NCBI GenBank assembly: GCA_907165135.1
Contig: CAJRAX010000011.1
Coordinates: forward strand, 1 to 57,156
Origin: Oikopleura dioica
Taxonomy: Eukaryota > Animalia > Chordata
Reading direction: 5' to 3'
Length of the DNA: 57,156 bases
A model generated the notes under the pieces. The model ran no database searches, was not told the DNA's origin, and saw nothing but the letters and a program-made list of their open reading frames with translations. A program made the position numbers and the translations under genes. Positions 1,338 to 57,156 of the stretch are shown here, piece after piece; within the stretch, counting starts at the first letter, position 1; every line of letters starts with the position of its first letter.

Positions 1338-3495
1338 ATGAGACAAGTAACGACACATCCAAAAGAATTGACGAGAGAAGCGGTTGAGAAATGGCTGGAA
1401 GGTTTTAAGAAGAAGTTGAAAAGAACGACGAGCAGAGATGATTTGGACAGACTGCTTTTGTCCGTTGAGAGACAAGAGTTTGAATATAAATGGAATGCTA
1501 ATTGGGAGGAGGTTGTTTTTGAAAATGGAGAAGGAAAAGTTTTGCGTTGGGGCGAAGAAAAAGAAAATGAGCGATTACCGCATTCCAAAACGATTCTTGA
1601 AAAAATACAAAATTGAAAATCGAAAAATCGCGCGATCAGAATTGAAAGAAGAAACTGGAGAATGGATTCTCGACAAATCTTTCAAATCGATTTCTGAAGG
1701 AGGAGAAGCGATCGTTTTGGAAGAAAAATTTGGAGAATTGGACGTTGCCGTCAGGGTGCAGGCTTTTGACTCGGCGCTCTTTTGGAAGAAGAGGAGGAGT
1801 TGAAATTTGAGATTCATCTTTCAAATGGTAAGAATAATTGTTTTATTTTTGATTTTTACATTCTTAGATTATGAAACCGCCGAAAACGACGAAAAATATG
1901 ACGTTCCCGTGATCCCCCGTCATTCCAATATTATCAAGAATTATTGCAGCATAGAAGTCTTCTTGAGCGAAGACGAAGACAACGATGACTGCCTCGGATG
2001 GATAACGATAATGGAAAAGTGCGACTGCGATCTTCGAAGCCGACTCAAAAAAGAAGATCTCAACTTGGAAGAAAAAAAGAAAATAGCAGTTGGAGTGCAA
2101 GACGGACTTGATTATTTGAAGAGCGTCGGAATCTGGCATCACGACAAGAAGCCCGAAAATGTTCTCTTGAAAGATGGAGAACCGAGATGGGTCGATTACG
2201 GGACGTTGCAAGAATTAACTGGAAGAAGGAGCTTACGCGAAATGGGCTACGCGCGGAGAGGAAGCAAATATAGATACAGTAAATTTTTATGTAAGTTTTT
2301 AATTCGGTTATCTTGAATTAATTTTTCGTTTATTTTTTAGATTCTGGTTCTGCTGCTTTTTCGGGAAGTGAAGAACTTTGTAATGAAGACGGAGGAGAGG
2401 GATCGCCACTTCATATTTTGATTCTCTGCGACTGGAAGTCTGCCTGGAGTCTTCTTTACAATCCCATCGAAGAAGGCGAGCGAGAAATGATCAAAAATGA
2501 ACTAAAGGTTTTTGGATTCTTCGTATTTTTTCGACAATTTCATTTTTTTTAGAAATTCAATGCGGCCTGGCTATCAAAAAAAACTCCAACAACCGATGAA
2601 ATCAAAAGTTTATCAGAAATCATTTCGCTAAAAAACGCGCCTTCCCATTTTTGCCTGGACGATCCAAGCTTGACAAAATCCTCCGCGATGGCCAATCTCA
2701 AACAGAAAATGACGAAACAAATCAATTTCGACTTCAAAAACGTGACGAAGAATGTTTTGAACCAGAAAGAAAGCAATCTTTGTGTGCCAATTTCAGTTAC
2801 TACTCTTTTGAGATGGGCCATCAAAAATGATTTGCGAGTTAAAAATGGATATTATGAATTATATTGTTCTTTTGAAAAAATCTTCACAATTCTGACGATG
2901 GTGATTTATCCGCGCAGTTTGGCTGGATTAAATTTAAATCCGAAATTCGAAGAACAAGAATTCCAAACAAACGAAATTGAGTTGCTTCTCAGAAGATTAA
3001 AATTTGAGACTTATTTGAATCCAAGTGGATGGGAAATTATTAAAAGAATGAGTAAAAGATTAATAAGAGGCAATTTTGATTTCGAGCTAGGTATCTTCAC
3101 TTTGTTATCATAACTTTGAAAATAATAATATATTTTCAGTGCTCCTCCACGACAAATTCTCCTCCACCCGTCCCCTGACAGTCACCGGCGCCTACCTAAA
3201 TCCCGACGGATCTGTGTTTTCCCACCAAATGGTGCTTGACCGCGTCGAAAACTCCAAATTCATTCTCCAAAACACACTCATCGACCATTCTGGCACTAAA
3301 ATCGAAATTCCTCAGAACAGGCCATTCTACGCCGAATACAAAATGATGAAAGATTGCTACGACTTCTACAAAAAATATGAGTATCGCGGAGACAACGGCG
3401 AGATCATGACTCTGGCGAACGAGCAGATCAAAAATATGAAGAAAGAAACTTGGCACCTTCTCCCACAGGCTTATTCGATTATTCTCAGAAAATAA
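1338..3495 (+). CDS. Multi-exon protein kinase-like protein with C-terminal papain-like (clan CA) Cys protease-like domain; two apparent 1-bp homopolymer frameshifts in exon 1
   Basis: Kinase motifs ISEGGEAIV, VAVRVQ, HHDKKPENVLL, VDYG. GT-AG introns at 1828-1867, 2291-2340, about 2508-2552 and about 3090-3139 join the ORFs. C-terminal NQKESNLC...SHQMVL...FILQNT. Confidence 0.75.
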
Positions 3496-3929
3496 TAAAA
3501 ATCAATTTTCAAATGTTTGATTTCAAGTGCCTCGAATCATTCTCGTAACTGTAAAATTTTCTTAATGCTACTAATTAAAAATGACAATAAAAATGACGAT
3601 TTCACTTTATTTCTTTCGAATAATCATCAATATTAAAAGTCGGGAAGCCCAATTCTCCAGCAAGCAGGCTTTTCGTATCTTCCCATTCCCAAAATCAATC
3701 GCTTCTTGAGTAAAATATAATATTTTTGATTTCAAAAGAAGGCGGAGTTTTCGTACTTGGTCAGTCATAATTCGGCACTAGAACGAAATGCTACTGCCGC
3801 GGGCAATGCTAGCGCTCATACTTATTCTCTTAAATTGACGGAACGTTTGCTTATTAGTTAACTAAAGAGAATTCAGAATCAGAGAAGAAGATAGAAATTA
3901 TAAGCTTTCAATCTAGAGCTTGAGGCTCA

Positions 3930-6900
3930 ATGTACGGGTATGTATCCCCTTAATTTTTGATACTAGAACTTATAATTAGAAGCAAGATAAAAAATCCGGA
4001 GAAAAATTTTTTTCTTTAAAATTTTTCCACTAAAAATAAAAGACCTTATTTTTTCAGACTGCGCTCAGTCCGCAGACGTCATGTATTCCTCATCTTCGCA
4101 ACAATCTTCCTCGTCATTTTCCTGACCAACAACACAAATGCAGTTCACCGACTCAGGCGGCTCGACATCGAGTCGATCGACTGGAGCAACTACGAAGAGG
4201 ACATCATTTCCCACGTCAAAGAAGAGCTCAATTCCATCGTGGAAAATCCCGAAGATTTTTTAGAATCAAAAAAGACCGAAGAGATAGAAGAGAAAATTGA
4301 GGAAAATGAGAAAACAACTTTGACGGAAACATCATCAACGTCAGCAACATCGACAATTTCGACAAGTTCGACAATTTCTTCCTCATCAACATCATCATCA
4401 ACAACAGAAAAAACTGAGAAGAGAATTGAGACGCCGAAAAGTGCAGAAAACAAAGAAGAAAATCAACAAAGAAAAAATGAAAAAGAGGTTGAAAATGAGC
4501 CAGAAAAACCATCCCATTCACCAGAACCGGAAATATCTCGAGTCAAAATCGAAAAAAACGCTCAAGAACCCGCCGCGATCGCGAAGCAAAAAGCGCTAGA
4601 AAACATCAAAAAACATCTGCAGCCAGCCAAAATCCCAGAAAAAGAATCCGTGCCTTGGGTTTATCCAACAATTCCAGCTCCTGGCGAAAAGAAAAAGGGC
4701 CCGCCAGTAGTGGCAAAACGCTTTGTCGTGAAAAAATTTCTGAATGCGACGAACATTCATATTTTTTATCGATCGCTCCCGGAGAAAACTGAGCAGAGGC
4801 GGCTTTTACGGGCGTATATGAAGATGTGGATGAGTGTTAATTCCGACGAGTCGATGCTTCCGATGAATTACTCGATCGTCTCTTTTGATGACGAAAAAAC
4901 AAGGCGAGAAAGCGAGAAATTCGGGGATCTCCACCTCTGCGCTCGGAATTCAAGCGAGCTGGAAGAATACACCCTTCTCATGAAAGCAGTGAATCTCGCC
5001 ACGGAAATGAATTTGAACGAAACCGAAGTCGCAATTTTCGCCTACACAACTGACCTCGTTGATTCCAGCGAAATCACCAGCGCGACCGGAAAATTGGCAG
5101 CGATCGACTCGGGTGGGGAGAAAAATATGATTTGCTTCAAAGGTTCTAGCAGGGATACGAATCATTATTCTAGTTGTGGAGAAAAACCGGTTTTTGCGCT
5201 GAGAGGAGATGTTGTCAAATTGTTGGCGAAAGAGATGGAGATTATCAAGCCTTACATGGGGAGCATTGAAGAACGCCGAATAGGTACATCTTTTTGTCTT
5301 CTTTTTATCGCAAGAAAATGATTAATTTTAGGCTGGTTGACTGGAATCGTCCGTGCTCGCTCGAAAATCGTAGGATTGGGCGTCAACCAAGACAACCACA
5401 ATCTCATCCAAATGCCCTTCGAACTCGAGCAGTTCAACGACTTCTACGAGGACAACTACGACTGGGGAATGGATCGAAAGCCTCGAAAACTGATGGACTA
5501 CGACCTGCCCGAAATTTACAGAAAACCAGCGGAATGGAAGATAGAAATAGAAATAGCGCCACCTTGCGACCCTTCTCCTTACTTGTATCTCGTGAAAACT
5601 TCCAGGTAAAAATCGAAATTGAGTCACGTGATGAAACTTTCAGGAAAAATTTTGAGCGTCGAAATTTTCTCCGGGCGTTTCAAGAGTTCGACAAAAACTC
5701 GACCAAGATCGAAAATCTTCCTCAAATGCGATTTTTGCTTGGAAAAGGAAAATCCTCGGAAGACCCTTCCATCGAGAAATTCATTAAAAAAGAGATGAAA
5801 GAGCACGGCGACTTGGTGGTTGGAAAGTTCATCGACGAATACGACAATCTTCCTCACAAAACAATGGCTGGCTATACTTACTTCGCCGAAAACTGCATGA
5901 AACCGCACAAGAAGCAGTACGTGATGTTTATCGATGACGATGTCTTGCTGGACGTCGAGCATCTCGACAGTTATTTCAAGCAACCAAACGCTAGCGACTT
6001 CACTTGCTTTGGATTCCTCGGAGAACATGCGAGGCCGAATCGATGGGGAAAATACAACGTTACAATTGAACAGTGGGCGGGCGGTCATTTCTTTCCGAAA
6101 TTTTGCTCCGGTAGGATCTTTTTCCTGCTTCAAATTCTTTATGTTTCAGGTCCTTGCGCTGGAATGACGGCAAAAATGAGCGAGAAGATATATGAGGCAG
6201 CTTCTACGACGGATGCCAAGGGGTTCAAGCTTGAAGACGTCCTTTTTACAGGTTAAGAACTTTCTTAATGTCTACTTTTAGAGAAAAAGAGACATGACGA
6301 GACATCTCCTGACATTGTCGGACATCTTCGGACATCAAGAGACATCAAGAGACATTCTTAGACATCCCAATGTCTTTTGATGTCAAGAAGTGTCGCCAGA
6401 TGTCTGGAGATGTCCCTGAATGTCAAAATGATAAAAAATTTTAACCAGCTCTTGATTTGCTCTCATCGTTGATTTCAGGCATTATTCGAACGAAAGCGGG
6501 CATCCCGGAGCCATCCTTTCAAAAAGACGTGTGCAAACATTTCGACCAAAAGACCAAGCAAGCGACGGAAATGTCGATGTGGCAATACATCCGACAGCTG
6601 TGCGCCCGGCGCAAATACATGTAAGAAACAACGGAAAAAAACAATGGCCCTAACTCATTTTAAAGGTCGACGATTCAAGATCTGGAAAAACTAGCGATCG
6701 CGTTCGGATTCGATCCGAATAAGTACGCGCACCTTAAAGTTGGCCTCCCCCCGGGCGTGTCGGCAAGAAAACCTCCCATCGTTGAAAAGGGGGTTTCGGT
6801 GGTAAAACCAGTCGACCTCGAGGGAAAAGTCGGAAAACCAATTTACCGAAAACCTGATCTTTCAAAACCCGGGCTATATCAGGCCCCAAAGCCGACAGTA

Positions 6901-13219: not shown

Positions 13220-16200
13220 ATGTCGAGATACAAGCCTTCTCTTGCTCTTACAGTACTGGTCCTACTGTTTCTACCGCTGGCAAATGCAGAAATTTGGCAC
13301 AGCGAACACACAATGAAAGAAACAGGGCCTGGATCCTTTCTCGTCAACTTGGACCAGCAATTCGGCACCTCAGGACTCGAATGGAAACTCATCACGAACG
13401 CCAAAGGATTTGAACTGAAGGGCTCCGATCTTTACACCAAATCCGAAATCGACCGAGAAAAAATCTGCCCAACGAAGAAAAATGAAGACTGTATTATTAA
13501 TTTGAAGCTCTATTCCTTCAAAAATCAAGGAATTTACGAACTCAGGTAGGCTTTTTCAAATTTTTTTGTAAAATTTTTCAATTATTTGATAAATAATAAA
13601 CGTTAAAATTGAAATTACCGCCGCTTGTTTGTGGTTAATCAAAGACTGCGTGATTTAGGGGGCTGATGAGCACGCGTACTCAAAATAAGACCCTGCACCT
13701 CTGCGCTTATTTATAAGCAAATTAAGTTTTAATGGAGATTTCGGCGATTTCCGCAAAAAAATCATAAGGGAATCCCTATTTAAACGGATTTCCCATCCTC
13801 TTTAATTCTTATGAGATAATTTTTCGAAATTCTGTTCAGAAAGGGACACCCTTGAGAAAAATTTGATTCAATGATTTTTCATCATCAAAAAATCGTTTAG
13901 TTTGACGATCGAAGATGTCAACGACCACAAGCCAGTTTTCGAAGACGAACCGATCGAGATTTTCTTTTCCGAAGACGCCCAAGTTGGCCAGCGAAAAATG
14001 CTCTTCAGCGCGACTGATGAAGACTCCGACGAATTCGGAATCGACCGCTACTCGCTGAAAGACGACTCGGAAACGTTCAACCTGGTCGAGTACAAAAACC
14101 CAGACGACACGAAAGTTCCACAGCTGATTTTAAAAAGAACTCTCGACCGCGAAGAAAAGGACAATTACGAACTCGCCTTGACGGCGTTCGACAAAGGCGA
14201 GCGCGCGAGCACGGTCAAGGTGCTCGTCAACGTTGTTGACGTTAATGACAATCGGCCGACTTGGCAAGGCTGCGAGGGAGGCTCCGTTTCGATCTCAATC
14301 AAAGAGGGGCTCGCGATTGGCGAGCGACTGCCGATCTCTATTGTTGCCACCGACGCGGATGATGGGCTAAATGGACAGATTACTTACAGGTAGAAAGAAA
14401 AAACGCGGCAAAAGTGACAGTAGGCTGATTGATACTTTCTCAAAGCTTTTAAAAGATTTCCGGATGATGAAAAGTAGATATTTCGAGACAAATTGTTAAA
14501 AGTATTCAAAAATTTATTATTTCAATTTTAGATATTCCTCGACAACAAACACCGAAGCCCGAAAAGTCTTCAATTTGAACCCTCAAACAGCCGAAATCAC
14601 AATTCTCGAATCACCCGACTTCGAAAACGTCCAATCCCACCACCTCTACCTCGAAGCAGTTGACAACGGTCAAGAACCCAAAGTCGCCTACTGCATCCTC
14701 AACGTCAACGTCCTCGACGAAAACGACGAAGAGCCGGAAGTCCAAGTCACACCGCTGAATGCCGAGGCAGGCAGCAACTCGAGCGTGATTTTTCTGAAAG
14801 AAGACTTCGAAGTTGGAGGGTAAGAGTGACTCAATTCAGGGACCACTTGCTGCGATTTGTGATAAGAGGATCATTTAATCCAGCGTTTTTCACGGCTCAG
14901 GAGGCGATATTCTTAATTTTCGCGATAAGTGAATTAGTTGTTGACGCTCTAGAATCTGTTGCCAAAACAGGCACTGATATGCTGCACCACCACCACCACC
15001 ACGGCACTTGAATTTTTTCCACTATTTGGCATTTTTTTTATCAATTTTGATATTCGGATTGTTTTATTTTCAAAGCTCTATTAAAAATCTTATTGGTATT
15101 TTTTGAAATTCCTGAATTTTAATTGGCCAATCAAATTTTCCTTTTGAGAAAAATTAAAGGTAATTTCAGGCTCTTCGCAATTGTCCTTGTCACCGATAAA
15201 GACAACCGCGGCGAAGAAGTCACCGCCTCCATCGACAACAGCGCTTTTGAACTGGTCAAGTTTGAAGTCGGCAGCTTTCAACTGCTCCTCGCCGAGGCGC
15301 TCGACTACGAGCAGACTACAGTTATTCAGGCGACGATCTCAGCCACCGACGGAGAGCAAAGCCCCCTTACAAAGGTTTATCCTCTCGAGATTGTCGTCCA
15401 GGATGTGAACGACAATGGCCCCAAGTTTCAGCTTCAAGGAAATGGTCATTTTTTCTTCCTTTCTTTTCATTAAAAAAATAAGCCGCTTTGTAAAATTCTT
15501 TCAAAGTTTCAAAAATTGACCGCAAAAAACAGAATACCAAGTCAAACTCTCCGAATCGGAAGAAATCGGCTACGTCTTGCTCAACCGCTTTAGCGCCACG
15601 GACGAAGACGCCGGCGAAAACGGTTGCATCGACTACGAATTAACTGGAAAAGACTCGTATCTCTTCGGCACTGAAGTGGAAGGCGATTGCGGGCCAGTCT
15701 CGATCGTCCTCAGGCAAAAAATCGATTACGATGAACAACAGCTCGACTCGGAAAGCGCTGAATTGGGAAAGATGGAACTTCAACTCGTGGCAAAAGACCG
15801 CGGTTTTCCGCAAAAAACAAGCGCTACGAGCATTTTTGTCGAGCTTATCGACGAGAACGACAACCAGCCGACCTTTTCCAAGTCGAAATACAGCTTCGAA
15901 TTCCCCGAAACTGCTGAAAAAGGCGACATAATTGGAATCATCACCGCTGAAGACAACGATCTCAGCCCTGCTTTTTCCGACATCAAATTCGACTTCAAAC
16001 CTGAAAAAAGTCAGCTGTCGACTCCGCCGAATCCCTTCGAGTTGGAAATGATGGCCGATAAAAAGTCCGCCCAAATTGTTCTCAAAAGACAACTCGATTT
16101 TGAAGATGAAGGAGAGAAAAACAACAAAAAATGGGAATTTGTCATTACCGCCGAAAACCCGGAAATGCAGGGGATGACAGTCAGCGAGGCACATGTCAAA

Positions 16201-17713
16201 ATCCAGCTTCTCGACGTCAACGAGTTCGCTCCTTCGATCGAGTTCAAGAAATTCAAGACGCTGCGGACTAACAAGGGCAAATCCTACGCGGTGGTCGAGG
16301 AACAGGCGAATGTTACTGTATCGAGATTGGAAGTTAGCGATGAAGACGCTTCAACGACCGCAGAGGATGTTTCCATTCAACTTTTTCCGACTTCGAATCA
16401 ATTTTTCAAGCTCCAGGAAACCTCAAAAACCGGAAAATACCTCCTCGACTACCAGGGCAATCACGCTGACGGGCTTTTTCTAGTCGAAATCGCCGCCAAC
16501 GACAATTTTTCTCCTTCCCCAAAAAACAGCACCATCCGCTTTCCAGTGTTCATCAACACTCGAGCGAGCAAAAATGCCACGGAAATTGCCGCAATCGTCG
16601 ATGAAACCCAACTTGAAGATCTTGACAATGACGATTTCGCCGATATTTTGAGCGCGAACATTGTCTTTATCGGCGGCGGAGCAGCGGTTTTCCTCATTTT
16701 GCTGATTGTTTTGGTTTGCTGTTGTTGCAGGTAAGAGCAGTGGCACTTCTTCAAGCCAAATAAGAATATGGAAGAGGATCATTTATTTAAAATGCCGATT
16801 TTTAGAGCGCGCTGCTGGAGCAAGAAAAAAACAAGGGCACCAAGAAGCCTACAATGTTTCGATGAAAAAAGGGGGGCATGATTATTTGGCGAGCTCGAAG
16901 CATGGCGCTACTCTCGACTCAAGAAACGACTTTGAGGGCAACTGGACGAAACCATACGATCCTAGAGCCATGCAGGTAGCTTTTCATCCCTTTGACTCTC
17001 TTTTACTTATTTCTAGTCGCCTGGGCAATCTTCCTATCATTCTGGAAACGACTCTGGCAAGGGCGAATCTATTCCGACTCAAAACTACCCGGGAAACTCC
17101 TACAACTTCCCAGGTAAAAAAAATTCTAAAAAAAGCCAGCAAAATTGGCGAATTCGCAAGTGACTTGTTCAAGTGGCTAGCTGACGGGTCGGCACTTGGT
17201 CCAGCTGTCACTCGCGCTGCACTTGCTCGCTAAAACCCGTCAAAGTTACTTCCGGGGTGATTTAATTATTGTTATCTTTAGCGCCGCCACCAGCAGTTGG
17301 TTACAATACTCAGCCGCAAGAAATTGGGGATGAAGAGTGGATGGGCTCGCTTCTTCGGCAAAATAATAATCAAATCCAAGGTAAAATTCGATGAAACTTT
17401 CTTTCCATATTTTTCGTTTCCAGAAGGAGCCGCAACAGATACCTTCATCGCCGCGCCAATGAGCAAGTCGAGCTCTTCAAAGCTGATCTACTCTCCTCCT
17501 TCTTCCCAAAGCTATCAAAGTCTCAGCCGCCGCGGCAATAACAACCCTCACCGACCTCATTTCTCCACTTTTCTGGACGAAGAAGAAGTCCGCTCTGAAA
17601 CCAGTTCGATCAGCGTCGCCTTGCTCAACGGGCACATGTCTCCTCATTACGACTCCGACATTGCCAGCAACGCCGGAACTCTCAACAGAAATCAGAACAA
17701 TCGAATTCAGTAA
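13220..17713 (+). CDS. Protocadherin with 7 cadherin repeats (delta-1-like architecture), intron-split ectodomain
   Basis: Signal peptide MSRYKPSLALTVLVLLFLPLANA. DxND/ExP linkers (DVNDHKP, DVNDNRP, DENDEEP, DVNDNGP, DENDNQP, DVNEFAP), LDRE/LDYE/LDFE motifs, TM segment ending VCCCCR, cytoplasmic exons. One extra A in an A7 run near 16825. Confidence 0.9.
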
Positions 17714-18076: not shown

Positions 18077-19358
18077 TTATTCAAGGGAAAACATAACTTT
18101 CATGCAATTTCCAGAGCGCGCCAATTCGAAGGCACTTTCGAATTCTTCAAGTTTGAATCGATGCGAGATCAGCGCTTTCAACAAGTCAAAAAGCAGAAAT
18201 CGCTACTGTTTTTGCTAAAGTCTATTTTGACATTTTCCTTCAATCTGTTTTTGTATTTCTGGGCTATGGTGACTCCAGCTGGCCAAGTGTTGCAGTAGCG
18301 AAAGACGCCGCGAATGTCGATTTCCTGAACCGAAGCAAGCATGATTGGCAACTCGTACATCTTGTCGCGCGGAGCCAAGCCAACGAGAACGACTGTTGAT
18401 CCTGGCTTCGCCGCGAAGATGCTTTTTCGGGATTTATTTTTTCCGCTCGATGTTAAATTGAATGCTCTTTAGAATCCGAAGCTAAGCTGCATGCATTCTG
18501 TTCGACCAGTGCATTCCATCACAGCGTCGAATTTTTGCCCAAGCTCGGTCAAAATGTCGTCACGTGATTTTGACATGACATTAACAGTTTCAAAACCAAG
18601 GGATCGAGCGAGCTCTAGGCGACTTTCGATGACATCTGTTAAGACGATTCTTCCGGCTCCTCTTGCGCTCGCTGCGATCGCGCTTTTATTATCAAATAAT
18701 TAATTAATTAATTTATTCATTACCTCACAAGTCCAATCGGCCCAGCTCCAGTAATAAGCACATCCTGGCCAGGTTCAACTCTTGCTCGCTTAGCAGCGTG
18801 AATTCCAACAGAAAGCGGCTCAATCATCGCGCCCAGCTCGTAGCTCATCTCTTCCGGCATCTTGTAGCAGCAGCTCGCCTTGTGCACGAAGTACTGGCAG
18901 AGACAACCGTCGTCCGGCGGCGTGGCGCAGAAAAACACCTTGCTCAAATTGTAGCGCCCGTTTTTCGTCAATTCATCGTCGCCAGTCGCGTAGCCGGGTT
19001 CGAAAGCGACGCGATCGCCTTTGACAACGTTGCTGACTTTGGATCCGACTTGGATGATTTCGCCAGCGCCTTCGTGGCCGAGAACCATTTTGTTGTCAAC
19101 TGCGAATCGGGCTCCTCGGCCTTGAGTCCAGTAATGAACATCTGATCCGCAGATGCCAACTGCCTGAAACAGAGTTGAAAAATCAATCATTCTCAAGGGC
19201 CTTACCTTTACTTTGATCAAAACCTCATCCTCCTCCAGAGACCGCGTCGCTCCAAGATCGCCAATTTTCAGCTCTGTTATCCAATCGCCCGGAACTCCCT
19301 TGTCAGTCCAGGGATCCTTGCCCTCTCTGTTTTCGACGAAGATGCCTCGATTCTGCAT
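18077..19358 (-). CDS. SORD: Sorbitol dehydrogenase (Zn-dependent MDR family)
   Basis: VGICGSDVHYW, MVLGHEGAG, GDRVAFEPG, IEPLSVGIHA, GAGPIGL, GVFRYCNTWP, LISHRFKLEE across 5 exons. Confidence 0.93.
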
Positions 19359-19575
19359 GTTACAAAATTTCAAGAAAAAGATGGCAAAATGGCCATTTTA
19401 TTCAAATTCAAGTGCTTGGCAAATAAAGAGATTGATGATCGTAAATTGTCGTTAATTTTAAGGAGCCCACTTCTTTCGACAAGAGCTCTGCAAGCTAAAA
19501 TTTGATTTTCAATTTTGCAATACATTTATTTGATTTATTCAAAATCAGTGTCAAAAAGCAGCAGTTAAAGATTTT

Positions 19576-22182: not shown

Positions 22183-25100
22183 TCAGTATTTGATAATTTC
22201 TTTAACTCGACCTCGATCTAAAAATATCGACGTCGATCCCAATATTTTGCTTTCTTCCTCCACATGAGTGCTCACCAAAACGCCTTTGTTTAATTTTTCA
22301 AACACTTGAAGCAAGCTTTTCATTTTGATCCTCGCTGACGGGTCCAGACCGCTCTAGAAAAAATTAATAATACAGAAAAAGAAGCAAGCACTCACGGAAG
22401 GTTCATCAAGAACGATGAAATCCGGGTTGTTGAGAATCGAAATGGCGACGGACAATTTTCGCTTAGCTCCTCCAGAAAGCTCTTTCGTCAGTCTTTTGGA
22501 ATATTTGACAATATCCACGAGGGAACTGATTTCCTTCGCGACTCGCTGGCAGTTTTCGATTCCTCTTGTTCCGAGTAAGATTTCGATCGTTTCTTCTACC
22601 GTCAAGTTGTCTAGCAGACAATCTTGCTGTCTGCAATACCCGATTCTTCCTGATCTCGAAATGAAGCCACTTGATGGGGTCTTTAATTGACAGAGAATGC
22701 TCAAGAGCGTTGTTTTTCCAGCCCCGTTTGAGCCGAGAAGACAGATGGTTTCCCCACGATGAAGGTTGAAAGAAACATCTTTCAGTACTTCCTTCTTTCG
22801 CTGCTTTTCTATTAAAGGGTCTCAAAATGAAGAATCGAGAAAATAAAAGAATGAAGAATTTTAGACCGTCCTTTGTAGATTTTGGTGATATTTTTGATTT
22901 GAATGGATTCTTCTGAATTAGGAACAGAATTCGTTTCTTCAATGGGTGTTAGTTCATCATCGCAGTTTTCAAGGAAAAAGAGAATCATCCAGTAGATAGA
23001 CGAAAGACCAAAGCATCTGTTTCCATGGTTGTTAAAAAATTAAACGATTTTGTAACCTTTTATTTTCTCCAACCATTTTCTTATCCACGAATTGCCAGAT
23101 ATTCTGACCACGCTCATCGAATCAATCTGTATCGCTTGGCAAAAGAAAGATACTCCCGTGGTCTTTTTACTGATGCATAATTTCGAGAAAGAATTTGACG
23201 AATAGATTTCAAAAAGCTCGATCGCGAAGTTGTACGAAGGCAGAATTCCATACAGCTGAAAGAGAAGAGAAGACTCTTGCTCGTTTCCGGTGAAGATCTG
23301 CGCGCAGGTGGCGGACATGAACATCAGAACCGTGCAAATGATGTTGACGTTGCTGTGGTGGCCGATGAAGGAGCCTTTGTCTTCTGATAGATGGCCGAGG
23401 ATGAAAGCTACCGGCATGTGGGCAATAAAGAATCGGATGCAGACGAAAAAGACGGGCGAGAATTCGTCGAGTCCGAGGAGAAAATTCGGCGATTTGATGA
23501 AAAACTCGTCGCTGCCATCGTTGCGACAAGAAGTAGCACTGACTGTATTAGACAGGTGACGTACTGGATGAGCCAGAAGTGATGCCTTTTCAGGTTCGAT
23601 GTATGCGCTTGAATTTGCCTGAAGCCAGTTGTTCTCTCCTCCACTGCGTTCATTCCAATCGGCGCCATCATCAGCATCATCGCCAAAATACAGTTGTAGA
23701 CTACGGTCATTCCTTTCACAAACGAATCTGTAAAGAGCGCGTCTCCCTCCGGCTGGGGAAGATCAAAGGGCTTGTGGGTCAGAAACATGCTCGAGTTGCT
23801 CTTTGCTTTTGAAGAAGGGTTCGATGAGAATGAAGGAGAGCAGCTGGAGGAGCGTGGAAAAAGTCGTTCGGGAACAAAGAAAAGTCGTAGTCTGGAAGGT
23901 GGACGATTCCGTTCAGTCCCGTTCCGATCGTTTTCAGCACATCGTCGAAATTGACCGTTGATGCTTCCGGGCTTGCGCTTCTATTGCTGTCGAGGAAGAT
24001 GTCTGTCAAGATGATCACGGCTGTCGGGAGGAGAAACTGCATTAAGAGGATGAAAGGATTTCTTTTCAGAAGAATAAAGCACTTTCGAAGCTGAGTAAGG
24101 AGAATTGACGAAATTTGATCGTCACTTTTTTGGCTTTCTGAAGGGCTTTTTCAAGGACTTCGTAACTTTTTATTCGTTCTTCTAGCTGCCAATTTCCTTT
24201 CTCTGTATTGACTGGATCAAAAAATGAGGACAGTCTGAATGAGGGTTCGTCTTTCATCATTTCTTTGAGCGATCCAGACTCGGGAAGCTGCCCATCTTTC
24301 AAGAAAATCACCGAGTTCGCTAAGTTTTCCGCTTCGTCCATGTAATGAGTCGACATGAGAATAGAAGTCGCGCTTGATAAACTTTTCAATATTCCCCAGA
24401 GTTCCTTTCTAGAGACCGGGTCAAGTCCGGAGGATGGTTCGTCCAAAAGCAATCTTTTCGGACGGCCGATGATGGAGAGCCCTAAAGAAAGCTTTCGAAG
24501 CATACCGCCCGAAAGCTGATTCGGAAAGTTTTCGAGCTTTTCGGAAAGTTGAACGTCTTTTGCCAAGGATTCAATCTCTTCATGGTCAAAAGAAGATTCA
24601 GCCGAGAGTTCGGAGAAGATTTCAAAATGCTCCTTCACCGTCAAAAATTCAAAGAAAATGTTGTGCTGCGGACAGTATCCGCAATTCCCGCTGCCGATGA
24701 GGTCTGATCCAGATGTGGGCTCAACAAATCCGCATAGAATGCTCAACAGCGTCGATTTTCCTGATCCATTTTCGCCGAGAAGAACTGTTATTGTCTTTTC
24801 TTCAGTTTTGAAGGAAACGTTTTTCAAGGCGACTTGACCGGAAGAAGAGTAGAATTTCGATAAATTTTGCACTTCGAAGCGAAAAGCGTCCGTTTTCTTC
24901 TGGGAGTTGAGTTTTCTGCTCTTTATGTTCTCAATTTTGAGAGTGAGGTAGAAGTAAAACAGCGTCGTGAGAAGAAGATAGAAGATAACATCGACCATTC
25001 CCAGTGGATCTTCAAAGAAAATTCTCTTGAAGAAATTCTTATTGAGAGACAAGGCCATCTTTTGCCTTCGTAATGGCAGATCATGTCGCAGCCCAATGCG

Positions 25101-26396
25101 AGCAAAATTGTTGGATTGAGAATGATCGCAATTTTCAGCAGAAATGGCATGAGACGCCAGCTGGTCGAGATAAATCCATGCGGGACGGAAATGAAGAAAA
25201 TGATCGCCGAAGTCACTGTTGCCGCCGTTGTTGGCGTCTTGAAAATGTCGAAGCAAAGTGACAGACGAAAATCAAGGAAGAACCATAAGCAGTGAGAAGA
25301 AGCCAGATAACGGAAAACGAAGTGTGGGGAAAGATCGCGCCGTTGGTCGAAATCTTCGCAGTCAACGAGAAGGAAACGATGGCAGAAGCGATCGATTGAA
25401 AAACCAAACTGACGAAGTGGTGCGCTAGAATGATGTCCTTCGGCGACGCGCCAACGAGAGACAGGTAATCCAGTCGATGTTCTTCCCTATGGCGAGTGAT
25501 AGTCCGAATCACGTGTTGGACAAAATGCGCAAATCCGATCATGAAAATCAGGTGGAGTTGTTGCCGCGCCATTTCCGCAAAAGTCGCAGTCAGTTTGACC
25601 GACTGTCGAAACGGCTGTAAAATTTGTTCAGCATCATTTTTGACGCCGTTTTGCTCTAGAAACTGTTTCTGAATCGAGTTCTGCACGGGTAGAAATGCTT
25701 CGGTGTAGTAGAGCGACCACTGAGAATGATCGTCGATCAAAGTTGAGCCGATTGTGTTCGTAATCATTTTCCCAAAAATCGTCGGAGAGGTCAAATGCCC
25801 CATCCAGCCCTTCCAATTTCCCTTGATTGGATATTTTCCAGCAGTTGGAACTGTTCGAATCGTAAAATCTAGCTTTTTAGAAACTTCTGAATGAAAATGA
25901 ACGCCGAGGAAAATATTCAAAGTGCTATTTTTCGATCGGGAATGAATGTACTCTTCCATGTCTTCAACTGTCGAAAATCCTTTCGGCACAATTCTTTTCT
26001 TTTGAGAAATGTTGCCGAAAAAGTCGTAGCCGCTGAATTTTCGACCGATGTCGGAGCAGGTTTTGTTGATGATTTCAAAGTTACGAGGAGTGTCTGGAGT
26101 GAAGAGGATCTCATGAGTGTCGACCACGGAGAATCGTTTGGGATAGACTTTTGACGAAATTATTGGCGGGAGGTTTACTTGCGGCGTGTCGTAATCTCTC
26201 GCTGAAAATTAAGATAGAGATTGGACGAGGGAATTTTCTTACCGATTGATTCCCTGAAACTGAGAAGCAAAATCGAGCTCAAAGAAGGAACCGTCAAGAG
26301 AAGAACCAAATCCAGCGGCTTTCTCAGCTTTTCTAGCAAGAACAGTCGAGCGAGGGTCCAAAATTTTCTCTTTGATATTTTTGAATTTTTCTTCAT
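22183..26396 (-). CDS. Full-size ABCA-family transporter (TMD-NBD-TMD-NBD), with apparent 1-bp frameshifts
   Basis: NBD1 GENGSGKST, LSGGMLRKLSLG, LLLDEPSSGLDP, STHYMDEAE. NBD2 LSGGAKRKLSVA, VLDEPS..GLDP. Hydrophobic TM ORFs lie between them. Frame changes near 25240 and 25060. Confidence 0.88.
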
Positions 26397-29188: not shown

Positions 29189-31155
<1,967 letters not shown>

Positions 31156-41738: not shown

Positions 41739-43075
41739 TTAAATTCTTTTACCTTGCGCGGTTCTCGTCTCGACCATGCTACGAGTCATCGAGCGCTCAT
41801 TCTGCAACTCCGTGAACGCCTTGACTGCTTTTTCCGTCACCGATCGAAGTCGTTTTCGGGGTGGCGGGCAGCTTCGTTCGCAAAGGCCATTTACTTCCAA
41901 CTTTTCTTCCCAGTATTTTCGCTGCTCCTCTAACTGAACGCTGTAGACTCTACAGTGTAGAGTTTCAATCACTCGGTTTGAATCTTTGCTTCCAAATCTT
42001 TCGAATTGTCCTTCGTCCCTACGATTTTCTCGGAGCTTTCGTTCGTAACCAGTCGATGGACGAAATAATCTCGAGCGTAGTCCCAAACTCGATTGTCGAA
42101 GATGTGTCCTAGAAATGCTCCTGAGCGTGCTCTTGTGTGCATCTCCCGCAGCTAATGTTTCCGCAAACGAGGCCTTATCCATAGATTTTCTTTTGAATTG
42201 CAAGAAAGACGTGCATACCCTTAGCTTTCCTGACTCGACGGAGTTTGCGTATATCGACAAACTGGGCAAGTGGAGTCTTCCTATTTTCAAACATTGAGAG
42301 TGGAAGGAATGATTGCAAAGAACGGTTGAAACGGACTTCACCGACTCGTCCATTCGCTCCAAACAAATCGTACAAGCAGGCAGCTCGGTGAGATTCGGTA
42401 ATGGCCAGCCTGCGCTTTCTCCAGCGTGAAGCAGTTCCACTTTTCCCACATACGTGATTTACGAAAACCTTTATAACTTTTTATGTGACGGCTTTTCTTT
42501 ACCTTGGCAAGTTTCTTCTAAGAGCGAGTTGAATTTCTGCCCAGTAATTGAGTGATAAAAAGTATCGGCACTTTGTTACTCGTCGAATTTTAAGAGAACC
42601 ATGTACTGATTCAGAGACTGGTCGCGCACGATCTTGATGTGTTCTATTTTCTTGTCGTAATTTCCGAGTGAACGGAGCAGATCCTGCGTGTCTAGATCCA
42701 CTGGAACATGTAGGAGCAGGAGCATGTCGCTAGGCCTTCCTCCGTGATGTTGAAGCCGTAGTTTGTCTTGTACAAGTGAATCAGCCCTTGAACTGATTTA
42801 AAAAGGAACTTGGGTTGGGAAAAGTTACCTTGGACAGATTCTATCGCAGCAAGACCGGACATGAACGGTTTTCGGTCGATGAGTTCGTTAGTCACTTTTT
42901 GCGATAGGTTCTGAGAGGGAAAAGATGTTGAAGATGAATTGCTTGAGTTTGAGTTACCTTGAGAGCGTCGGCGAAGGTAGATTCTACCTGAAAATCGACG
43001 GATTCGATTGAGTACTCGACGAATTGCCGAGATCAACGCATTTCTTGGGATTTTTCTCTGTCATTCGAGGACATG
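41739..43075 (-). pseudogene. BRAP: BRCA1-associated protein (BRAP2 domain, RING-H2, ZnF-UBP), disrupted
   Basis: IKIVRDQSLNQYMVLLKFDE*QSADTFY (in-frame TAA at 42576-42578), ELPACTICLERMDES..LCNHSFHSQCL, STCPVCRY, ENLWI..LVCGNISCGR and RVWDYARDYFVHRLV, with frameshifts and a missing segment. Confidence 0.8.
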
Positions 43076-53515: not shown

Positions 53516-55878
53516 GTTATGCTTGTAGAGGGCTCAAGTTAGTCTTAGAGCGTGGGCGCGACTAGGGTTATGCTTGTAGAGGGCTCAAGTTAGTCTTAGA
53601 GCGTGGGCGCGACTAGGGTTATGCTTGTAGAGGGCTCAAGTTAGTCTTAGAGCGTGGGCGCGACTAGGGTTATGCTTGTAGAGGGCTCAAGTTAGTCTTA
53701 GAGCGTGGGCGCGACTAGGGTTATGCTTGTAGAGGGCTCAAGTTAGTCTTAGAGCGTGGGCGCGACTAGGGTTATGCTTGTAGAGGGCTCAAGTTAGTCT
53801 TAGAGCGTGGGCGCGACTAGGGTTATGCTTGTAGAGGGCTCAAGTTAGTCTTAGAGCGTGGGCGCGACTAGGGTTATGCTTGTAGAGGGCTCAAGTTAGT
53901 CTTAGAGCGTGGGCGCGACTAGGGTTATGCTTGTAGAGGGCTCAAGTTAGTCTTAGAGCGTGGGCGCGACTAGGGTTATGCTTGTAGAGGGCTCAAGTTA
54001 GTCTTAGAGCGTGGGCGCGACTAGGGTTATGCTTGTAGAGGGCTCAAGTTAGTCTTAGAGCGTGGGCGCGACTAGGGTTATGCTTGTAGAGGGCTCAAGT
54101 TAGTCTTAGAGCGTGGGCGCGACTAGGGTTATGCTTGTAGAGGGCTCAAGTTAGTCTTAGAGCGTGGGCGCGACTAGGGTTATGCTTGTAGAGGGCTCAA
54201 GTTAGTCTTAGAGCGTGGGCGCGACTAGGGTTATGCTTGTAGAGGGCTCAAGTTAGTCTTAGAGCGTGGGCGCGACTAGGGTTATGCTTGTAGAGGGCTC
54301 AAGTTAGTCTTAGAGCGTGGGCGCGACTAGGGTTATGCTTGTAGAGGGCTCAAGTTAGTCTTAGAGCGTGGGCGCGACTAGGGTTATGCTTGTAGAGGGC
54401 TCAAGTTAGTCTTAGAGCGTGGGCGCGACTAGGGTTATGCTTGTAGAGGGCTCAAGTTAGTCTTAGAGCGTGGGCGCGACTAGGGTTATGCTTGTAGAGG
54501 GCTCAAGTTAGTCTTAGAGCGTGGGCGCGACTAGGGTTATGCTTGTAGAGGGCTCAAGTTAGTCTTAGAGCGTGGGCGCGACTAGGGTTATGCTTGTAGA
54601 GGGCTCAAGTTAGTCTTAGAGCGTGGGCGCGACTAGGGTTATGCTTGTAGAGGGCTCAAGTTAGTCTTAGAGCGTGGGCGCGACTAGGGTTATGCTTGTA
54701 GAGGGCTCAAGTTAGTCTTAGAGCGTGGGCGCGACTAGGGTTATGCTTGTAGAGGGCTCAAGTTAGTCTTAGAGCGTGGGCGCGACTAGGGTTATGCTTG
54801 TAGAGGGCTCAAGTTAGTCTTAGAGCGTGGGCGCGACTAGGGTTATGCTTGTAGAGGGCTCAAGTTAGTCTTAGAGCGTGGGCGCGACTAGGGTTATGCT
54901 TGTAGAGGGCTCAAGTTAGTCTTAGAGCGTGGGCGCGACTAGGGTTATGCTTGTAGAGGGCTCAAGTTAGTCTTAGAGCGTGGGCGCGACTAGGGTTATG
55001 CTTGTAGAGGGCTCAAGTTAGTCTTAGAGCGTGGGCGCGACTAGGGTTATGCTTGTAGAGGGCTCAAGTTAGTCTTAGAGCGTGGGCGCGACTAGGGTTA
55101 TGCTTGTAGAGGGCTCAAGTTAGTCTTAGAGCGTGGGCGCGACTAGGGTTATGCTTGTAGAGGGCTCAAGTTAGTCTTAGAGCGTGGGCGCGACTAGGGT
55201 TATGCTTGTAGAGGGCTCAAGTTAGTCTTAGAGCGTGGGCGCGACTAGGGTTATGCTTGTAGAGGGCTCAAGTTAGTCTTAGAGCGTGGGCGCGACTAGG
55301 GTTATGCTTGTAGAGGGCTCAAGTTAGTCTTAGAGCGTGGGCGCGACTAGGGTTATGCTTGTAGAGGGCTCAAGTTAGTCTTAGAGCGTGGGCGCGACTA
55401 GGGTTATGCTTGTAGAGGGCTCAAGTTAGTCTTAGAGCGTGGGCGCGACTAGGGTTATGCTTGTAGAGGGCTCAAGTTAGTCTTAGAGCGTGGGCGCGAC
55501 TAGGGTTATGCTTGTAGAGGGCTCAAGTTAGTCTTAGAGCGTGGGCGCGACTAGGGTTATGCTTGTAGAGGGCTCAAGTTAGTCTTAGAGCGTGGGCGCG
55601 ACTAGGGTTATGCTTGTAGAGGGCTCAAGTTAGTCTTAGAGCGTGGGCGCGACTAGGGTTATGCTTGTAGAGGGCTCAAGTTAGTCTTAGAGCGTGGGCG
55701 CGACTAGGGTTATGCTTGTAGAGGGCTCAAGTTAGTCTTAGAGCGTGGGCGCGACTAGGGTTATGCTTGTAGAGGGCTCAAGTTAGTCTTAGAGCGTGGG
55801 CGCGACTAGGGTTATGCTTGTAGAGGGCTCAAGTTAGTCTTAGAGCGTGGGCGCGACTAGGGTTATGCTTGTAGAGGG
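53516..55878 (+). repeat. Telomere-associated 51-bp tandem array, block 1 (46 full units plus 17 bp)
   Basis: Unit GTTATGCTTGTAGAGGGCTCAAGTTAGTCTTAGAGCGTGGGCGCGACTAGG, with no variant copies seen. Confidence 0.98.
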
Positions 55879-56170
55879 TTAGGGTTAGGGTTAGGGTTAG
55901 GTTAGGTTAGGGTTAGGGTTAGGGTTAGGGTTAGGGTTAGGGTTAGGGTTAGGTTAGGGTTAGGGTTAGGGTTAGGGTTAGGGTTAGGGTTAGGTTAGGG
56001 TTAGGGTTAGGGTTAGGGTTAGGGTTAGGGTTAGGGTTAGGGTTAGGGTTAGGGTTAGGGTTAGGGGTTAGGGTTAGGGTTAGGGTTAGGGTTAGGGTTA
56101 GGGTTAGGGTTAGGGTTAGGGTTAGGTTAGGTTAGGGTTAGGGTTAGGGTTAGGGTTAGGGTTAGGGTTA
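55879..56170 (+). repeat. Internal (TTAGGG)n tract, about 290 bp
   Basis: TTAGGG repeats with occasional TTAGG and TTAGGGG. Confidence 0.98.
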
Positions 56171-56875
56171 GTCTTAGAGCGTGGGCGCGACTAGGGTTAT
56201 GCTTGTAGAGGGCCCAAGTTAGTCTTAGAGCGTGGGCGCGACTAGGGTTATGCTTGTAGAGGGCCCAAGTTAGTCTTAGAGCGTGGGCGCGACTAGGGTT
56301 ATGCTTGTAGAGGGCCCAAGTTAGTCTTAGAGCGTGGGCGCGACTAGGGTTATGCTTGTAGAGGGCCCAAGTTAGTCTTAGAGCGTGGGCGCGACTAGGG
56401 TTATGCTTGTAGAGGGCCCAAGTTAGTCTTAGAGCGTGGGCGCGACTAGGGTTATGCTTGTAGAGGGCCCAAGTTAGTCTTAGAGCGTGGGCGCGACTAG
56501 GGTTATGCTTGTAGAGGGCCCAAGTTAGTCTTAGAGCGTGGGCGCGACTAGGGTTATGCTTGTAGAGGGCCCAAGTTAGTCTTAGAGCGTGGGCGCGACT
56601 AGGGTTATGCTTGTAGAGGGCCCAAGTTAGTCTTAGAGCGTGGGCGCGACTAGGGTTATGCTTGTAGAGGGCCCAAGTTAGTCTTAGAGCGTGGGCGCGA
56701 CTAGGGTTATGCTTGTAGAGGGCCCAAGTTAGTCTTAGAGCGTGGGCGCGACTAGGGTTATGCTTGTAGAGGGCCCAAGTTAGTCTTAGAGCGTGGGCGC
56801 GACTAGGGTTATGCTTGTAGAGGGCCCAAGTTAGTCTTAGAGCGTGGGCGCGACTAGGGTTATGCTTGTAGAGGG
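56167..56875 (+). repeat. 51-bp tandem array, block 2 (about 14 units, GGCCCAAG variant)
   Basis: Same unit with T>C (GGCTCAAG to GGCCCAAG) in all 13 copies of that position. Confidence 0.97.
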
Positions 56876-57156
56876 TTAAGTTAGTCTTAGGCGTTAGGTT
56901 AGGTTAGGGTTAGGCTTAGGGTTAGGGTTAGGGTTAGGGTTAGGGACTAGGGTTAGGGGTTAGGGTTAGGTTAGGGTTAGGGTTGAGGTTAGGGTTAGGG
57001 TTAGGGTTAGGGTTAGGGTTAGGGTTAGGGTTAGGGTTAGGGTTAGGGTTAGGGTTAGGGTTAGGTTAGGGTTAGGGTTAGGGTTAGGGTTAAGGTTAGG
57101 GTTAGGGTTAGGGTTAGGGTTAGGTTAGGTTAGGGTTAGGGTTAGAGTTAGGGTTA
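56876..57156 (+). repeat. Terminal telomere (TTAGGG)n with a degenerate proximal part
   Basis: TTAGGG runs to the window end, with a G-rich + strand as expected for a right chromosome end. Confidence 0.97.

What the first reader, a model, noticed from the sequence alone, without database searches (positions are those of the whole stretch)
1338..3495. Protein kinase fused to a papain-like cysteine protease domain
Seen: downstream of the kinase domain the spliced frame contains N-Q-KESNL-C (Gln codon 2763, Cys codon 2781), S-H-QMVL (His codon 3223) and FILQ-N-T (Asn codon 3271). Established: papain has Gln19/Cys25 (spacing 6) and His159/Asn175 (spacing 16, context YILIKN), and both spacings match exactly here. 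Inference: this is a cytosolic (no signal peptide) kinase-clan CA protease fusion, an architecture I do not recognise from animals. It could be a lineage-specific signalling or conflict/defence protein (deubiquitinase, transglutaminase or effector-like). The kinase is atypical (VAVR in place of VAVK, HHD, DYG).
Basis: partly seen in the sequence, partly recalled or inferred. Interest (0 to 1): 0.8.

Follow-up and report, generated by a model that had tools for sequence, protein, structure and literature searches.

The report
Kinase fused to papain-fold protease
This gene of the tunicate Oikopleura dioica joins an unusual protein kinase to a very divergent papain-type cysteine protease in one chain; it belongs to a large, undescribed family, but this copy near a chromosome end has a damaged first exon and is probably dead.

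Summary
Gln (2763), Cys (2781), His (3223) and Asn (3271) sit where stated, in a five-exon + strand gene (1338-3495) whose exon 2 passes Pfam's kinase threshold.

- All named relatives are unnamed Oikopleura dioica proteins annotated as kinase only; the rest are marine-metagenome fragments.
- A model of a paralogue's C-terminal domain (core pLDDT above 90) matches only clan CA cysteine peptidases. The best are C1 enzymes (Der p 1, Z 10.3; xylellain and calotropain, 10.1), with C39 almost level (9.6).
- Cys starts a helix and His lies on a strand.
- Across family members Gln is kept in 89/91, Cys 86/88, His 30/31 and Asn 26/31.
- Uninterrupted metagenome ORFs run from kinase into protease, so the fusion is one polypeptide.
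- No Pfam protease model reaches threshold.
- The kinase always has Arg for the beta-3 Lys but keeps HxDxKxxN and DFG.

This copy is probably a young pseudogene. Exon 1 has two frame breaks at homopolymers. Independent DNA contigs heal one (+T after 1779) but leave an in-frame TGA and one shift. No RNA reads came from this copy.

Function is untested. The scan had already reported this family from other parts of this genome.

The parts
1338..1827 (+). Exon 1: ATG at 1338, N-terminal helical region and kinase N-lobe. The glycine-loop remnant S-E-G-G-E-A is at 1693-1710, and V-A-V-R has its Arg codon at 1753-1755. The exon is not readable in one frame.
   Evidence: paralogues align in the frame of 1338 up to about 1545-1610, then in the frame of 1564 up to 1779, then in the frame of 1782.
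1545..1640 (+). First damaged zone of exon 1, rich in A-runs. The window needs a net frame change here. The independent DNA contig adds A after 1563, AA after 1586 and A after 1599. That reading is collinear with the family profile but holds an in-frame TGA (window 1568-1570) and still needs one shift, which lies between about 1605 and 1640.
   Evidence: table 4 and record 1 (138 letters, 0 other letters, 4 added); (profile positions 16-107 in the ATG frame at 50.4 bits against 38.3 for the window's own letters, then 100-178 in another frame).
1776..1781 (+). Second frame break, in a T-run. It is most likely an assembly undercall.
   Evidence: the contig has one more T after 1779 (record 2, 0 other letters); with that T, the VAVR segment and L-K-F-E-I-H-L-S-N read in one frame.
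1828..1867 (+). Intron 1 (40 nt, GT..AG, phase 1).
   Evidence: the frames of exon 1c and exon 2 join to give ...HLSN-D-YETAEN, collinear with paralogues.
1868..2290 (+). Exon 2: kinase core from the hinge to the activation segment. H-H-D-K-K-P-E-N is at 2137-2160 (catalytic Asp codon 2143-2145) and D-Y-G at 2194-2202.
   Evidence: Pkinase E 2.2e-10, 40.8 bits against a cut-off of 31.7; the family profile matches DAPK1 from hinge to DFG at E 5e-9.
2291..2340 (+). Intron 2 (50 nt, GT..AG, phase 1).
2341..2507 (+). Exon 3: end of the kinase C-lobe. G-S-A-A-F stands where the family has G-T-P-G-F; the C-D-W-K-S-A-W helix F motif follows.
2508..2552 (+). Intron 3 (45 nt, GT..AG, phase 0), the only thing separating the kinase part from the protease part.
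   Evidence: relatives have no interruption here.
2553..3090 (+). Exon 4: the conserved linker (F-C-L-D-D-P-S-L-T-K-S) and the helical (L) half of the papain-fold domain. Gln is at 2763-2765 and Cys at 2781-2783; the Y-P-R-S-L-A-G-L-N-L-N-P motif lies here.
   Evidence: (Peptidase_C1_2, E 0.061, below threshold).
3091..3139 (+). Intron 4 (49 nt, GT..AG, phase 1).
3140..3495 (+). Exon 5: the beta-sheet (R) half of the papain-fold domain. His is at 3223-3225, Asn at 3271-3273 and the stop TAA at 3493-3495. An AATAAA at 3494-3499 overlaps the stop.

Best explanation
The stretch is one copy of a large gene family seen only in Oikopleura dioica and unnamed marine-metagenome fragments (probably appendicularian). 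Its single polypeptide has four parts in order: a roughly 100-residue helical N-terminus; a very divergent, non-RD eukaryotic-type protein kinase domain in which the beta-3 lysine is always arginine; a strongly conserved but apparently flexible linker; and a cytosolic cysteine peptidase domain of the papain fold (clan CA, closest in shape to family C1) with an intact Gln/Cys/His/Asn set. Shown: the fusion, the fold, the conservation and the size of the family. Inferred: the C-terminal domain is an active thiol peptidase (or isopeptidase). Also inferred: the kinase-like domain, which the full-length model packs against it, acts as its nucleotide-binding or phosphorylating regulatory module. That would make it a single-chain kinase-effector switch, in the manner of IRE1 or RNase L, where a kinase-type domain controls a C-terminal hydrolase. 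This particular copy lies about 50 kb from a telomere. It keeps exons 2-5 open (491 codons) with all catalytic residues, but exon 1 is disrupted, so it is most likely a young pseudogene or at best N-terminally defective.
For: - Family and organism: 67 representatives; 40 paralogues, all named ones Oikopleura dioica; 358 clusters at E <= 0.01; of the 120 listed, every named one is Oikopleura dioica.
- Kinase: Pkinase 40.8 bits against a 31.7 cut-off; DAPK1 E 5e-9; Foldseek E about 1e-6 to 1e-7 to many ePKs.
- Papain fold: (model pLDDT 78, core above 90). Cys is the first residue of helix 82-98, His221 lies in strand 217-229 and Asn237 follows strand 232-236.
- Structural matches: one search lists 50 of 50 clan CA peptidases. 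Der p 1 scores Z 10.3 over 157 residues at 3.3 A; xylellain and calotropain 10.1; cathepsin B 9.7; PCAT1 C39 9.6. (atlas) gives C39-like, C1 and Josephin. Searches give weak C1 signals.
- Conservation: (Gln 89/91, Cys 86/88, His 30/31, Asn 26/31). In one search the blocks around Gln/Cys and the linker are the best conserved in the protein (0.88-0.93).
- One chain. A 1233-nt ORF present in three assemblies and a 1350-nt ORF run from kinase motifs into the protease without interruption.
- Full-length paralogue model: pTM 0.79.
- Damage in this copy.
- Family expression. The RNA runs give only 10-18 partial reads at 90-99% likeness; the best-supported ones (loose ends at 2236 and 2274) read like paralogue P0089.
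Against: - No enzymatic or expression data exist for any member.
- Foldseek against the PDB gave nothing significant for the protease domain.
- A family profile found no protease in the PDB by sequence.
- No Pfam protease model reaches threshold.
- Z of about 10 is only moderately above the background the tool quotes (7-8), although the list is uniform.
- Arg in place of the beta-3 Lys is the classic kinase-dead change, so the kinase may be a pseudokinase.
- Asn is replaced by Thr, Ile or Met in 5 of 31 members, and Cys by Ser in 2.
- I could not read model coordinates, so the closeness of Cys and His in 3D is inferred from topology only.
- The pseudogene call rests on one short contig of one run. 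The window assembly clearly undercounts homopolymers, so part or all of the damage could be assembly error.
Confidence: 0.72

Rival explanations
1. This copy is an intact, functional gene, and all frame breaks in exon 1 are homopolymer errors of the assembly.
For: All five differences between the window and the independent DNA contigs are homopolymer-length differences, with zero substitutions (records 1 and 2). One of them heals the break at 1779. Exons 2-5 are open over 491 codons with every catalytic residue present. Adding only the AA after 1586 would give one open frame.
Against: With all the contig's letters, the reading collinear with the family profile crosses a TGA and still needs a shift. 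The window's own letters are also broken. No RNA read from this copy was found in three RNA runs. Other copies of the family in this genome are reported broken (earlier notes s1-343559, s1-331762, s1-371357; not tested here).
Confidence: 0.25
2. The C-terminal domain is not a general peptidase. It is a ubiquitin-like-modifier isopeptidase (deubiquitinase, UFM1 or ATG8 protease type) or another clan CA chemistry such as an amidase, acyltransferase or transglutaminase.
For: Clan CA contains all of these. UfSP, ATG4A, ZUFSP and Mug105 appear at Z 6-8 and Josephin in the atlas search. The protein is cytosolic, without a leader or a recognised pro-domain.
Against: C1 endopeptidases and C39 peptidases score higher (Z 9-10) and align over more residues (150-166 against 130-136). 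Eight paralogues scanned here have no UBA or other extra Pfam domain.
Confidence: 0.25
3. The kinase-like domain is a catalytically dead pseudokinase. It serves only as a scaffold or nucleotide sensor for the protease.
For: Arg replaces the beta-3 Lys in every aligned member. The glycine loop is degenerate (S-E-G-G-E-A). Pfam and PDB sequence matches cover only the region from hinge to DFG. The window copy also has G-S-A-A-F where the family has G-T-P-G-F.
Against: HxDxKxxN and DFG (DYG here) are conserved throughout. That is unusual for a pseudokinase under no catalytic constraint.
Confidence: 0.45
4. The Q/C/H/N pattern is a chance motif in a non-enzymatic tail, or kinase and tail are two separate genes.
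For: Short motifs with these spacings arise by chance, and sequence-only searches find no protease.
Against: The fold search is uniform for clan CA. The residues are near-invariant while mean column identity is 27-29%. Single ORFs span both parts.
Confidence: 0.03

Closest known systems
Papain family, peptidase family C1 (Der p 1, xylellain, calotropain, cathepsins B/L/X)
   Same: These are the best structural matches (Z 9-10.3, 150-166 residues aligned). They share the order Gln, Cys (helix N-terminus), His (strand), Asn; Gln-Cys six residues apart and His-Asn sixteen apart; a Cys-to-His distance of about 140 residues as in papain; and the local contexts V-T-x-x-x-x-N-Q...C and [FY]-[IV]-L-Q-N, which resemble papain by my recollection.
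   Different: Identity is only 5-16%. No Pfam C1 model reaches threshold (best 12.6 bits against 22; 2 of 39 members at E < 1). There is no signal peptide and no I29-type pro-domain. The domain is cytosolic and sits at the C-terminus of a kinase.
Peptidase family C39 (bacteriocin-processing domains of PCAT1, ComA)
   Same: They are almost tied in Z (9.1-9.6) and head the atlas fold list. They are clan CA domains fused to another enzyme module (an ABC transporter), which shows that such peptidase domains work as parts of larger machines.
   Different: C39 domains are about 130-150 residues with a much smaller helical half. Only about 125 residues align, and they are bacterial.
IRE1 and RNase L (kinase or pseudokinase domain fused to a C-terminal hydrolase)
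   Same: Analogy of design only: a kinase-type domain directly followed by an effector hydrolase in one chain. IRE1 is among the best Foldseek hits for the kinase part.
   Different: The effector there is a KEN-domain ribonuclease, not a peptidase. No homology of the effector parts is implied, and regulation by dimerisation or nucleotide binding is not shown here.
Non-RD kinases of innate immunity (IRAK4, RIPK type)
   Same: The residue before the catalytic Asp is not Arg (HHD here; HFD, HYD, HCD, HKD in paralogues). IRAK4 recurs among the fold matches.
   Different: No death domain or other immune adaptor domain is present, there is no subfamily-level sequence match, and the fold E-values are equally good for CDK, MAPK, ULK and DCLK kinases.

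Membership tests
Eukaryotic protein kinase superfamily (Pfam PF00069) | Profile score above the curated threshold | tested here: met
   Exon 2 alone scores 40.8 bits against a cut-off of 31.7, E 2.2e-10. Paralogues score 31.8-49.4 bits.
Eukaryotic protein kinase superfamily (Pfam PF00069) | Catalytic loop HxD...N and the Mg-binding DFG Asp | tested here: met
   H-H-D-K-K-P-E-N at 2137-2160 and D-Y-G at 2194-2202; both are conserved in paralogues.
Eukaryotic protein kinase superfamily (Pfam PF00069) | Beta-3 lysine (VAIK) and glycine-rich loop GxGxxG | tested here: not met
   V-A-V-R has Arg at 1753-1755, and Arg stands there in every aligned paralogue. The loop reads S-E-G-G-E-A.
Peptidase clan CA (papain fold) | Two-lobed fold with the nucleophile Cys at the N-terminus of a helix and His on a beta-strand of the other lobe | tested here: met
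   Paralogue models place Cys as the first residue of a helix, His inside a strand and Asn just after the next strand. All 50 best chains are clan CA, best Z 10.3. 3D distances could not be read.
Peptidase clan CA (papain fold) | Catalytic Cys and His (plus Gln and Asn/Asp) conserved across the family | tested here: met
   Gln 89/91, Cys 86/88, His 30/31, Asn 26/31; all four are present in the window copy.
Peptidase family C1 (Pfam PF00112 / PF03051) | Profile score above the curated threshold | tested here: not met
   Peptidase_C1_2 scores 12.6 bits against 22. Only 2 of 39 members match at E < 1, best 0.0036. The PDB profile search finds no protease.
Peptidase family C1 (Pfam PF00112 / PF03051) | Secretory or lysosomal zymogen with a signal peptide and an inhibitory pro-domain | tested here: not met
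   There is no hydrophobic N-terminus in the window copy, and a kinase precedes the domain. Whether the conserved linker acts like a pro-segment is unknown.
Deubiquitinase / UBL-protease families of clan CA (UCH, USP, OTU, Josephin, UFSP, ATG4, ZUFSP) | Closest fold match or family profile match, and a ubiquitin-binding surface | tested here: inconclusive
   UfSP, ATG4A and ZUFSP appear at Z 6-8, below C1 and C39. There is no Pfam hit. Binding cannot be tested with these tools.
Active cysteine peptidase (function) | Thiol-dependent hydrolysis, blocked by E-64-type inhibitors and lost in a Cys mutant | not testable with these tools
   Needs bench work.

The most novel reading that the evidence does not exclude
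The family is a lineage-specific, single-chain 'kinase-gated protease' switch. The non-RD kinase-like domain senses a signal (nucleotide, phosphorylation or a pathogen-derived ligand) and releases or activates the attached papain-fold peptidase, perhaps by cleavage in the invariant flexible linker. The hundreds of fast-diversifying copies, some near chromosome ends, would serve as a cytosolic immune, cell-death or genetic-conflict system in appendicularians.
Probability: 0.15. Interest if true: 0.85.

Novelty: new variant of a known kind. Interest (0 to 1): 0.55.

Why it matters
Both folds are textbook enzymes, but I found no description of their fusion in one animal protein. The protease half is invisible to domain databases, so the public records of these proteins are annotated with a kinase domain only or left uncharacterized. 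A family of this size (358 clusters, fragments included) in a laboratory chordate with a very compact genome implies a sizeable piece of unknown biology. It may be a new way of coupling phosphorylation or nucleotide sensing to proteolysis. It also defines a new, very divergent family within clan CA. For genome annotation, the result is a warning that this assembly undercounts homopolymers, so apparent frameshifts need checking against short reads.

Tried and rejected
- Sequence-only searches of exons 4 and 5 and of the family profile against the PDB found no protease.
- Foldseek of the domain model against the PDB gave nothing significant; only the exhaustive structural aligner showed the fold.
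- There are no paralogues inside the window.
- I considered introns or micro-introns as the cause of the exon 1 frame changes and rejected them. Paralogue proteins align collinearly with no spare DNA. The only in-frame GC..AG pair I could find by eye (1552-1639) would delete a conserved segment and has no support.
- I classified the single-letter differences in the DNA run as synonymous or not. They are a mixture of paralogue k-mers (partial depths, stop-creating changes), so I drew no conclusion about selection.
- Pfam scans of eight paralogues found no extra domains such as UBA or ankyrin.
- The literature searches found nothing relevant.
- The neighbouring genes are ordinary and give no functional context: galactosyltransferase, cadherin, ABC transporter, alcohol dehydrogenase and RING finger.

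Full report
**What is there.**
The stretch 1338-3495 (+) reads as a five-exon gene with short GT..AG introns:
- exon 1, 1338-1827; intron, 1828-1867
- exon 2, 1868-2290; intron, 2291-2340
- exon 3, 2341-2507; intron, 2508-2552
- exon 4, 2553-3090; intron, 3091-3139
- exon 5, 3140-3495, with stop TAA at 3493 and an AATAAA overlapping it

The kinase motifs are V-A-V-R (Arg codon 1753), H-H-D-K-K-P-E-N (2137-2160) and D-Y-G (2194-2202). Exon 2 alone passes Pfam's kinase threshold (40.8 bits against 31.7). Exon 4 gives only a sub-threshold hit to Peptidase_C1_2 over the Gln/Cys region (E 0.061).

Whole-domain questions were answered with natural paralogues returned by the searches.

**Whose gene it is.**
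An exhaustive search with exon 4 found 67 representative relatives. A search with the longest (P0007, 664 aa) returned 40 proteins. All named ones are 'unnamed protein product [Oikopleura dioica]', annotated with a kinase domain only or not at all. A profile of the C-terminal domain found 358 clusters at E <= 0.01. Of the 120 listed, every named one is again O. dioica and the rest are unnamed marine-metagenome fragments. The window is therefore O. dioica. The family is large and, as far as these databases show, restricted to Oikopleura or appendicularians.

The window ends in (TTAGGG)n and a 51-bp satellite, so the gene lies about 50 kb from a telomere. Its neighbours are ordinary genes, and there is no second copy in the window.

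**Is the C-terminal half a papain-fold peptidase?**
I aligned 39 C-terminal domains, with the window's exons 4 and 5 as separate rows, and folded a paralogue (P0097:141-451) with that alignment. Mean pLDDT is 78, and above 90 through most of the core.
- The Cys is the first residue of a long helix (82-98).
- The His lies inside a strand (217-229).
- The Asn directly follows the next strand (232-236).

This is the topology that defines the papain fold. The full-length model of P0080 shows the same.

Foldseek found nothing significant. The exhaustive structural aligner gave 50 of 50 clan CA cysteine peptidases:

| Match | Family | Z | Aligned residues / rmsd |
|---|---|---|---|
| Der p 1 | C1 | 10.3 | 157 / 3.3 A |
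| xylellain | C1 | 10.1 | 163 / 3.8 A |
| calotropain | C1 | 10.1 | 150 / 3.2 A |
| cathepsin B | C1 | 9.7 | 166 / 3.7 A |
| PCAT1 peptidase domain | C39 | 9.6 | 125 / 2.8 A |
| UfSP, ATG4A, ZUFSP | UBL proteases | 6-8 | about 135-148 |

The atlas fold search agrees, giving C39-like, C1 and Josephin. A language-model look-up also leaned to Peptidase_C1.

Over 113 family hits, Gln is kept in 89/91, Cys in 86/88 (two Ser), His in 30/31 and the Asn at +16 in 26/31. Mean column identity is only 27-29%. The blocks around Gln/Cys are the best conserved of the whole protein.

So the fold and the catalytic set are established as far as prediction can go. Membership of clan CA is met. Membership of family C1 by profile is not met, and C1 against C39 cannot be separated by Z alone. 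The size of the helical half (about 140 residues between Cys and His) and the longer aligned lengths favour a C1-like origin.

**Is it one protein?**
In the window, only a 45-nt phase-0 intron separates the last kinase exon from the first protease exon. In relatives there is no interruption at all:
- P0038 is a 1233-nt ORF found in three independent marine assemblies. It runs from the kinase catalytic loop through DFG into the Gln/Cys region.
- P0064 is a 1350-nt ORF that runs from DFG to the end of the protease.

The full-length model of P0080 has pTM 0.79. For a 705-residue two-domain chain, that suggests a fixed mutual arrangement; I could not inspect the interface itself. The linker (P0080 residues 436-472, pLDDT under 50; the invariant F-C-L-D-D-P-N-L-T-K-S block lies just before it, where pLDDT is already falling) combines low model confidence with the highest sequence conservation. 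That combination is unexplained and would fit a cleavage, docking or pseudo-substrate segment.

**The kinase.**
It is a genuine but extreme member of the eukaryotic kinase fold. The profile matches DAPK1, CDK9 and TTK only from hinge to DFG. Foldseek gives E of about 1e-6 to 1e-7 to CDK11, IRE1, p38, ERK3 and IRAK4, with no clear subfamily. Every member has Arg where the beta-3 Lys should be and a degenerate glycine loop. All keep HxDxKxxN and DFG, and the residue before the catalytic Asp is never Arg, so the kinases are non-RD. Whether the domain phosphorylates or only binds nucleotide is open; I put it near even.

**State of this copy.**
Exons 2-5 are open (491 codons) and keep every catalytic residue. 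Exon 1 is not in one frame. Paralogues align in the ATG frame to about 1545-1610, then in another frame to 1779, then in a third.

Laying an independent DNA run (X2, contigs) showed that the window differs from it only in homopolymer lengths: +A after 1563, +AA after 1586, +A after 1599 and +T after 1779, with no substitutions on those contigs. That pattern is typical of homopolymer undercalls in the assembly.
- With the run's letters, the break at 1779 disappears.
- The first zone becomes more collinear with the family profile. The ATG frame now matches profile positions 16-107 at 50.4 bits, against 38.3 for the window's own letters.
- However, that reading crosses an in-frame TGA (window 1568-1570) and still needs one shift, somewhere between about 1605 and 1640, to reach the kinase N-lobe.

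Either version is therefore disrupted.

Three oligo-dT RNA runs gave only 10-18 partial reads at 90-99% likeness. The best-supported ones continue into sequence that reads like paralogue P0089. So the family is transcribed, but I saw nothing from this copy. The runs may also come from another O. dioica lineage. I rate a young pseudogene, or an N-terminally defective gene, at about 0.7. The evidence rests on one short contig.

**How it most likely works.**
Shown: the architecture, the fold and the conservation. Inferred: the C-terminal domain is an active cytosolic thiol peptidase or isopeptidase (about 0.7). The kinase-type domain would regulate it in cis or mark its substrates, by analogy with IRE1 and RNase L, where a kinase-type domain controls a fused hydrolase.

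The large, diverging copy number, the non-RD kinase and the frequent broken copies are compatible with a defence or conflict role. Nothing here tests that. Broken copies are reported in earlier notes of this scan, and I tested only this one.

**Novelty.**
I found no paper on this combination. The scan itself has already reported the same family from other pieces of this genome, with the same reading. This window adds one more copy, probably defective and lying near a chromosome end, and shows that its assembly undercounts homopolymers. I file it as a new variant of known kinds: a known kinase fold plus a known peptidase clan, in an undescribed fusion, with a protease family that no profile recognises.

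Noticed in passing
window 53516-57156: The window ends in a chromosome end. A 51-bp satellite (about 46 and 14 copies, 99-100% matches) is interleaved with two blocks of the telomere repeat (AGGGTT, i.e. TTAGGG)n at 55875-56171 and 56872-57156.
   Followed up: partly
window 1563, 1586, 1599, 1779 (also 1303 and 3576 outside the coding part): The assembly differs from independent DNA contigs only by shorter A- or T-runs, with no substitutions on the same contigs. This looks like systematic homopolymer undercalling, so apparent frameshifts elsewhere in this genome may be artefacts.
   Followed up: partly
window 2640-2670 (F-C-L-D-D-P-S-L-T-K-S) and 2899-2934 (Y-P-R-S-L-A-G-L-N-L-N-P): These two of the most conserved blocks of the family lie in, or next to, segments that the models predict with low confidence (P0080 pLDDT falling from about 430 and under 50 at 436-472 and 518-525). 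They could be cleavage, docking or phosphorylation sites; this is unexplained.
   Followed up: no
window 2236-2274: RNA reads from three runs match only this conserved stretch and continue on both sides into sequence that reads like paralogue P0089 (I-D-E-E-T-G-R-S-G-Y ... N-N-V-A-L-S-A-A-T-P). At least that paralogue is transcribed, and its reads are continuous across the position of this copy's intron 2.
   Followed up: partly
P0080, P0081, P0083 N-termini (not in the window copy): Some paralogues begin with a 15-17-residue hydrophobic stretch followed by a basic cluster. This could be a membrane anchor or a mis-annotated start. The window copy has none.
   Followed up: no
window 29942-30192: There are two short arrays of a 21-bp unit containing the palindrome TGCAGAACG(C/G)CGTTCTGCA, about 130 bp apart and in opposite orientation.
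   Followed up: no
window 5294-6253 (+), 15577-16731 (+), 18723-19373 (-), 24069-26127 (-), 41742-42449 (-): The neighbouring long ORFs carry galactosyltransferase, cadherin, alcohol dehydrogenase (GroES-like), ABC transporter and RING-finger domains. There is no functional link to the kinase-protease gene.
   Followed up: partly
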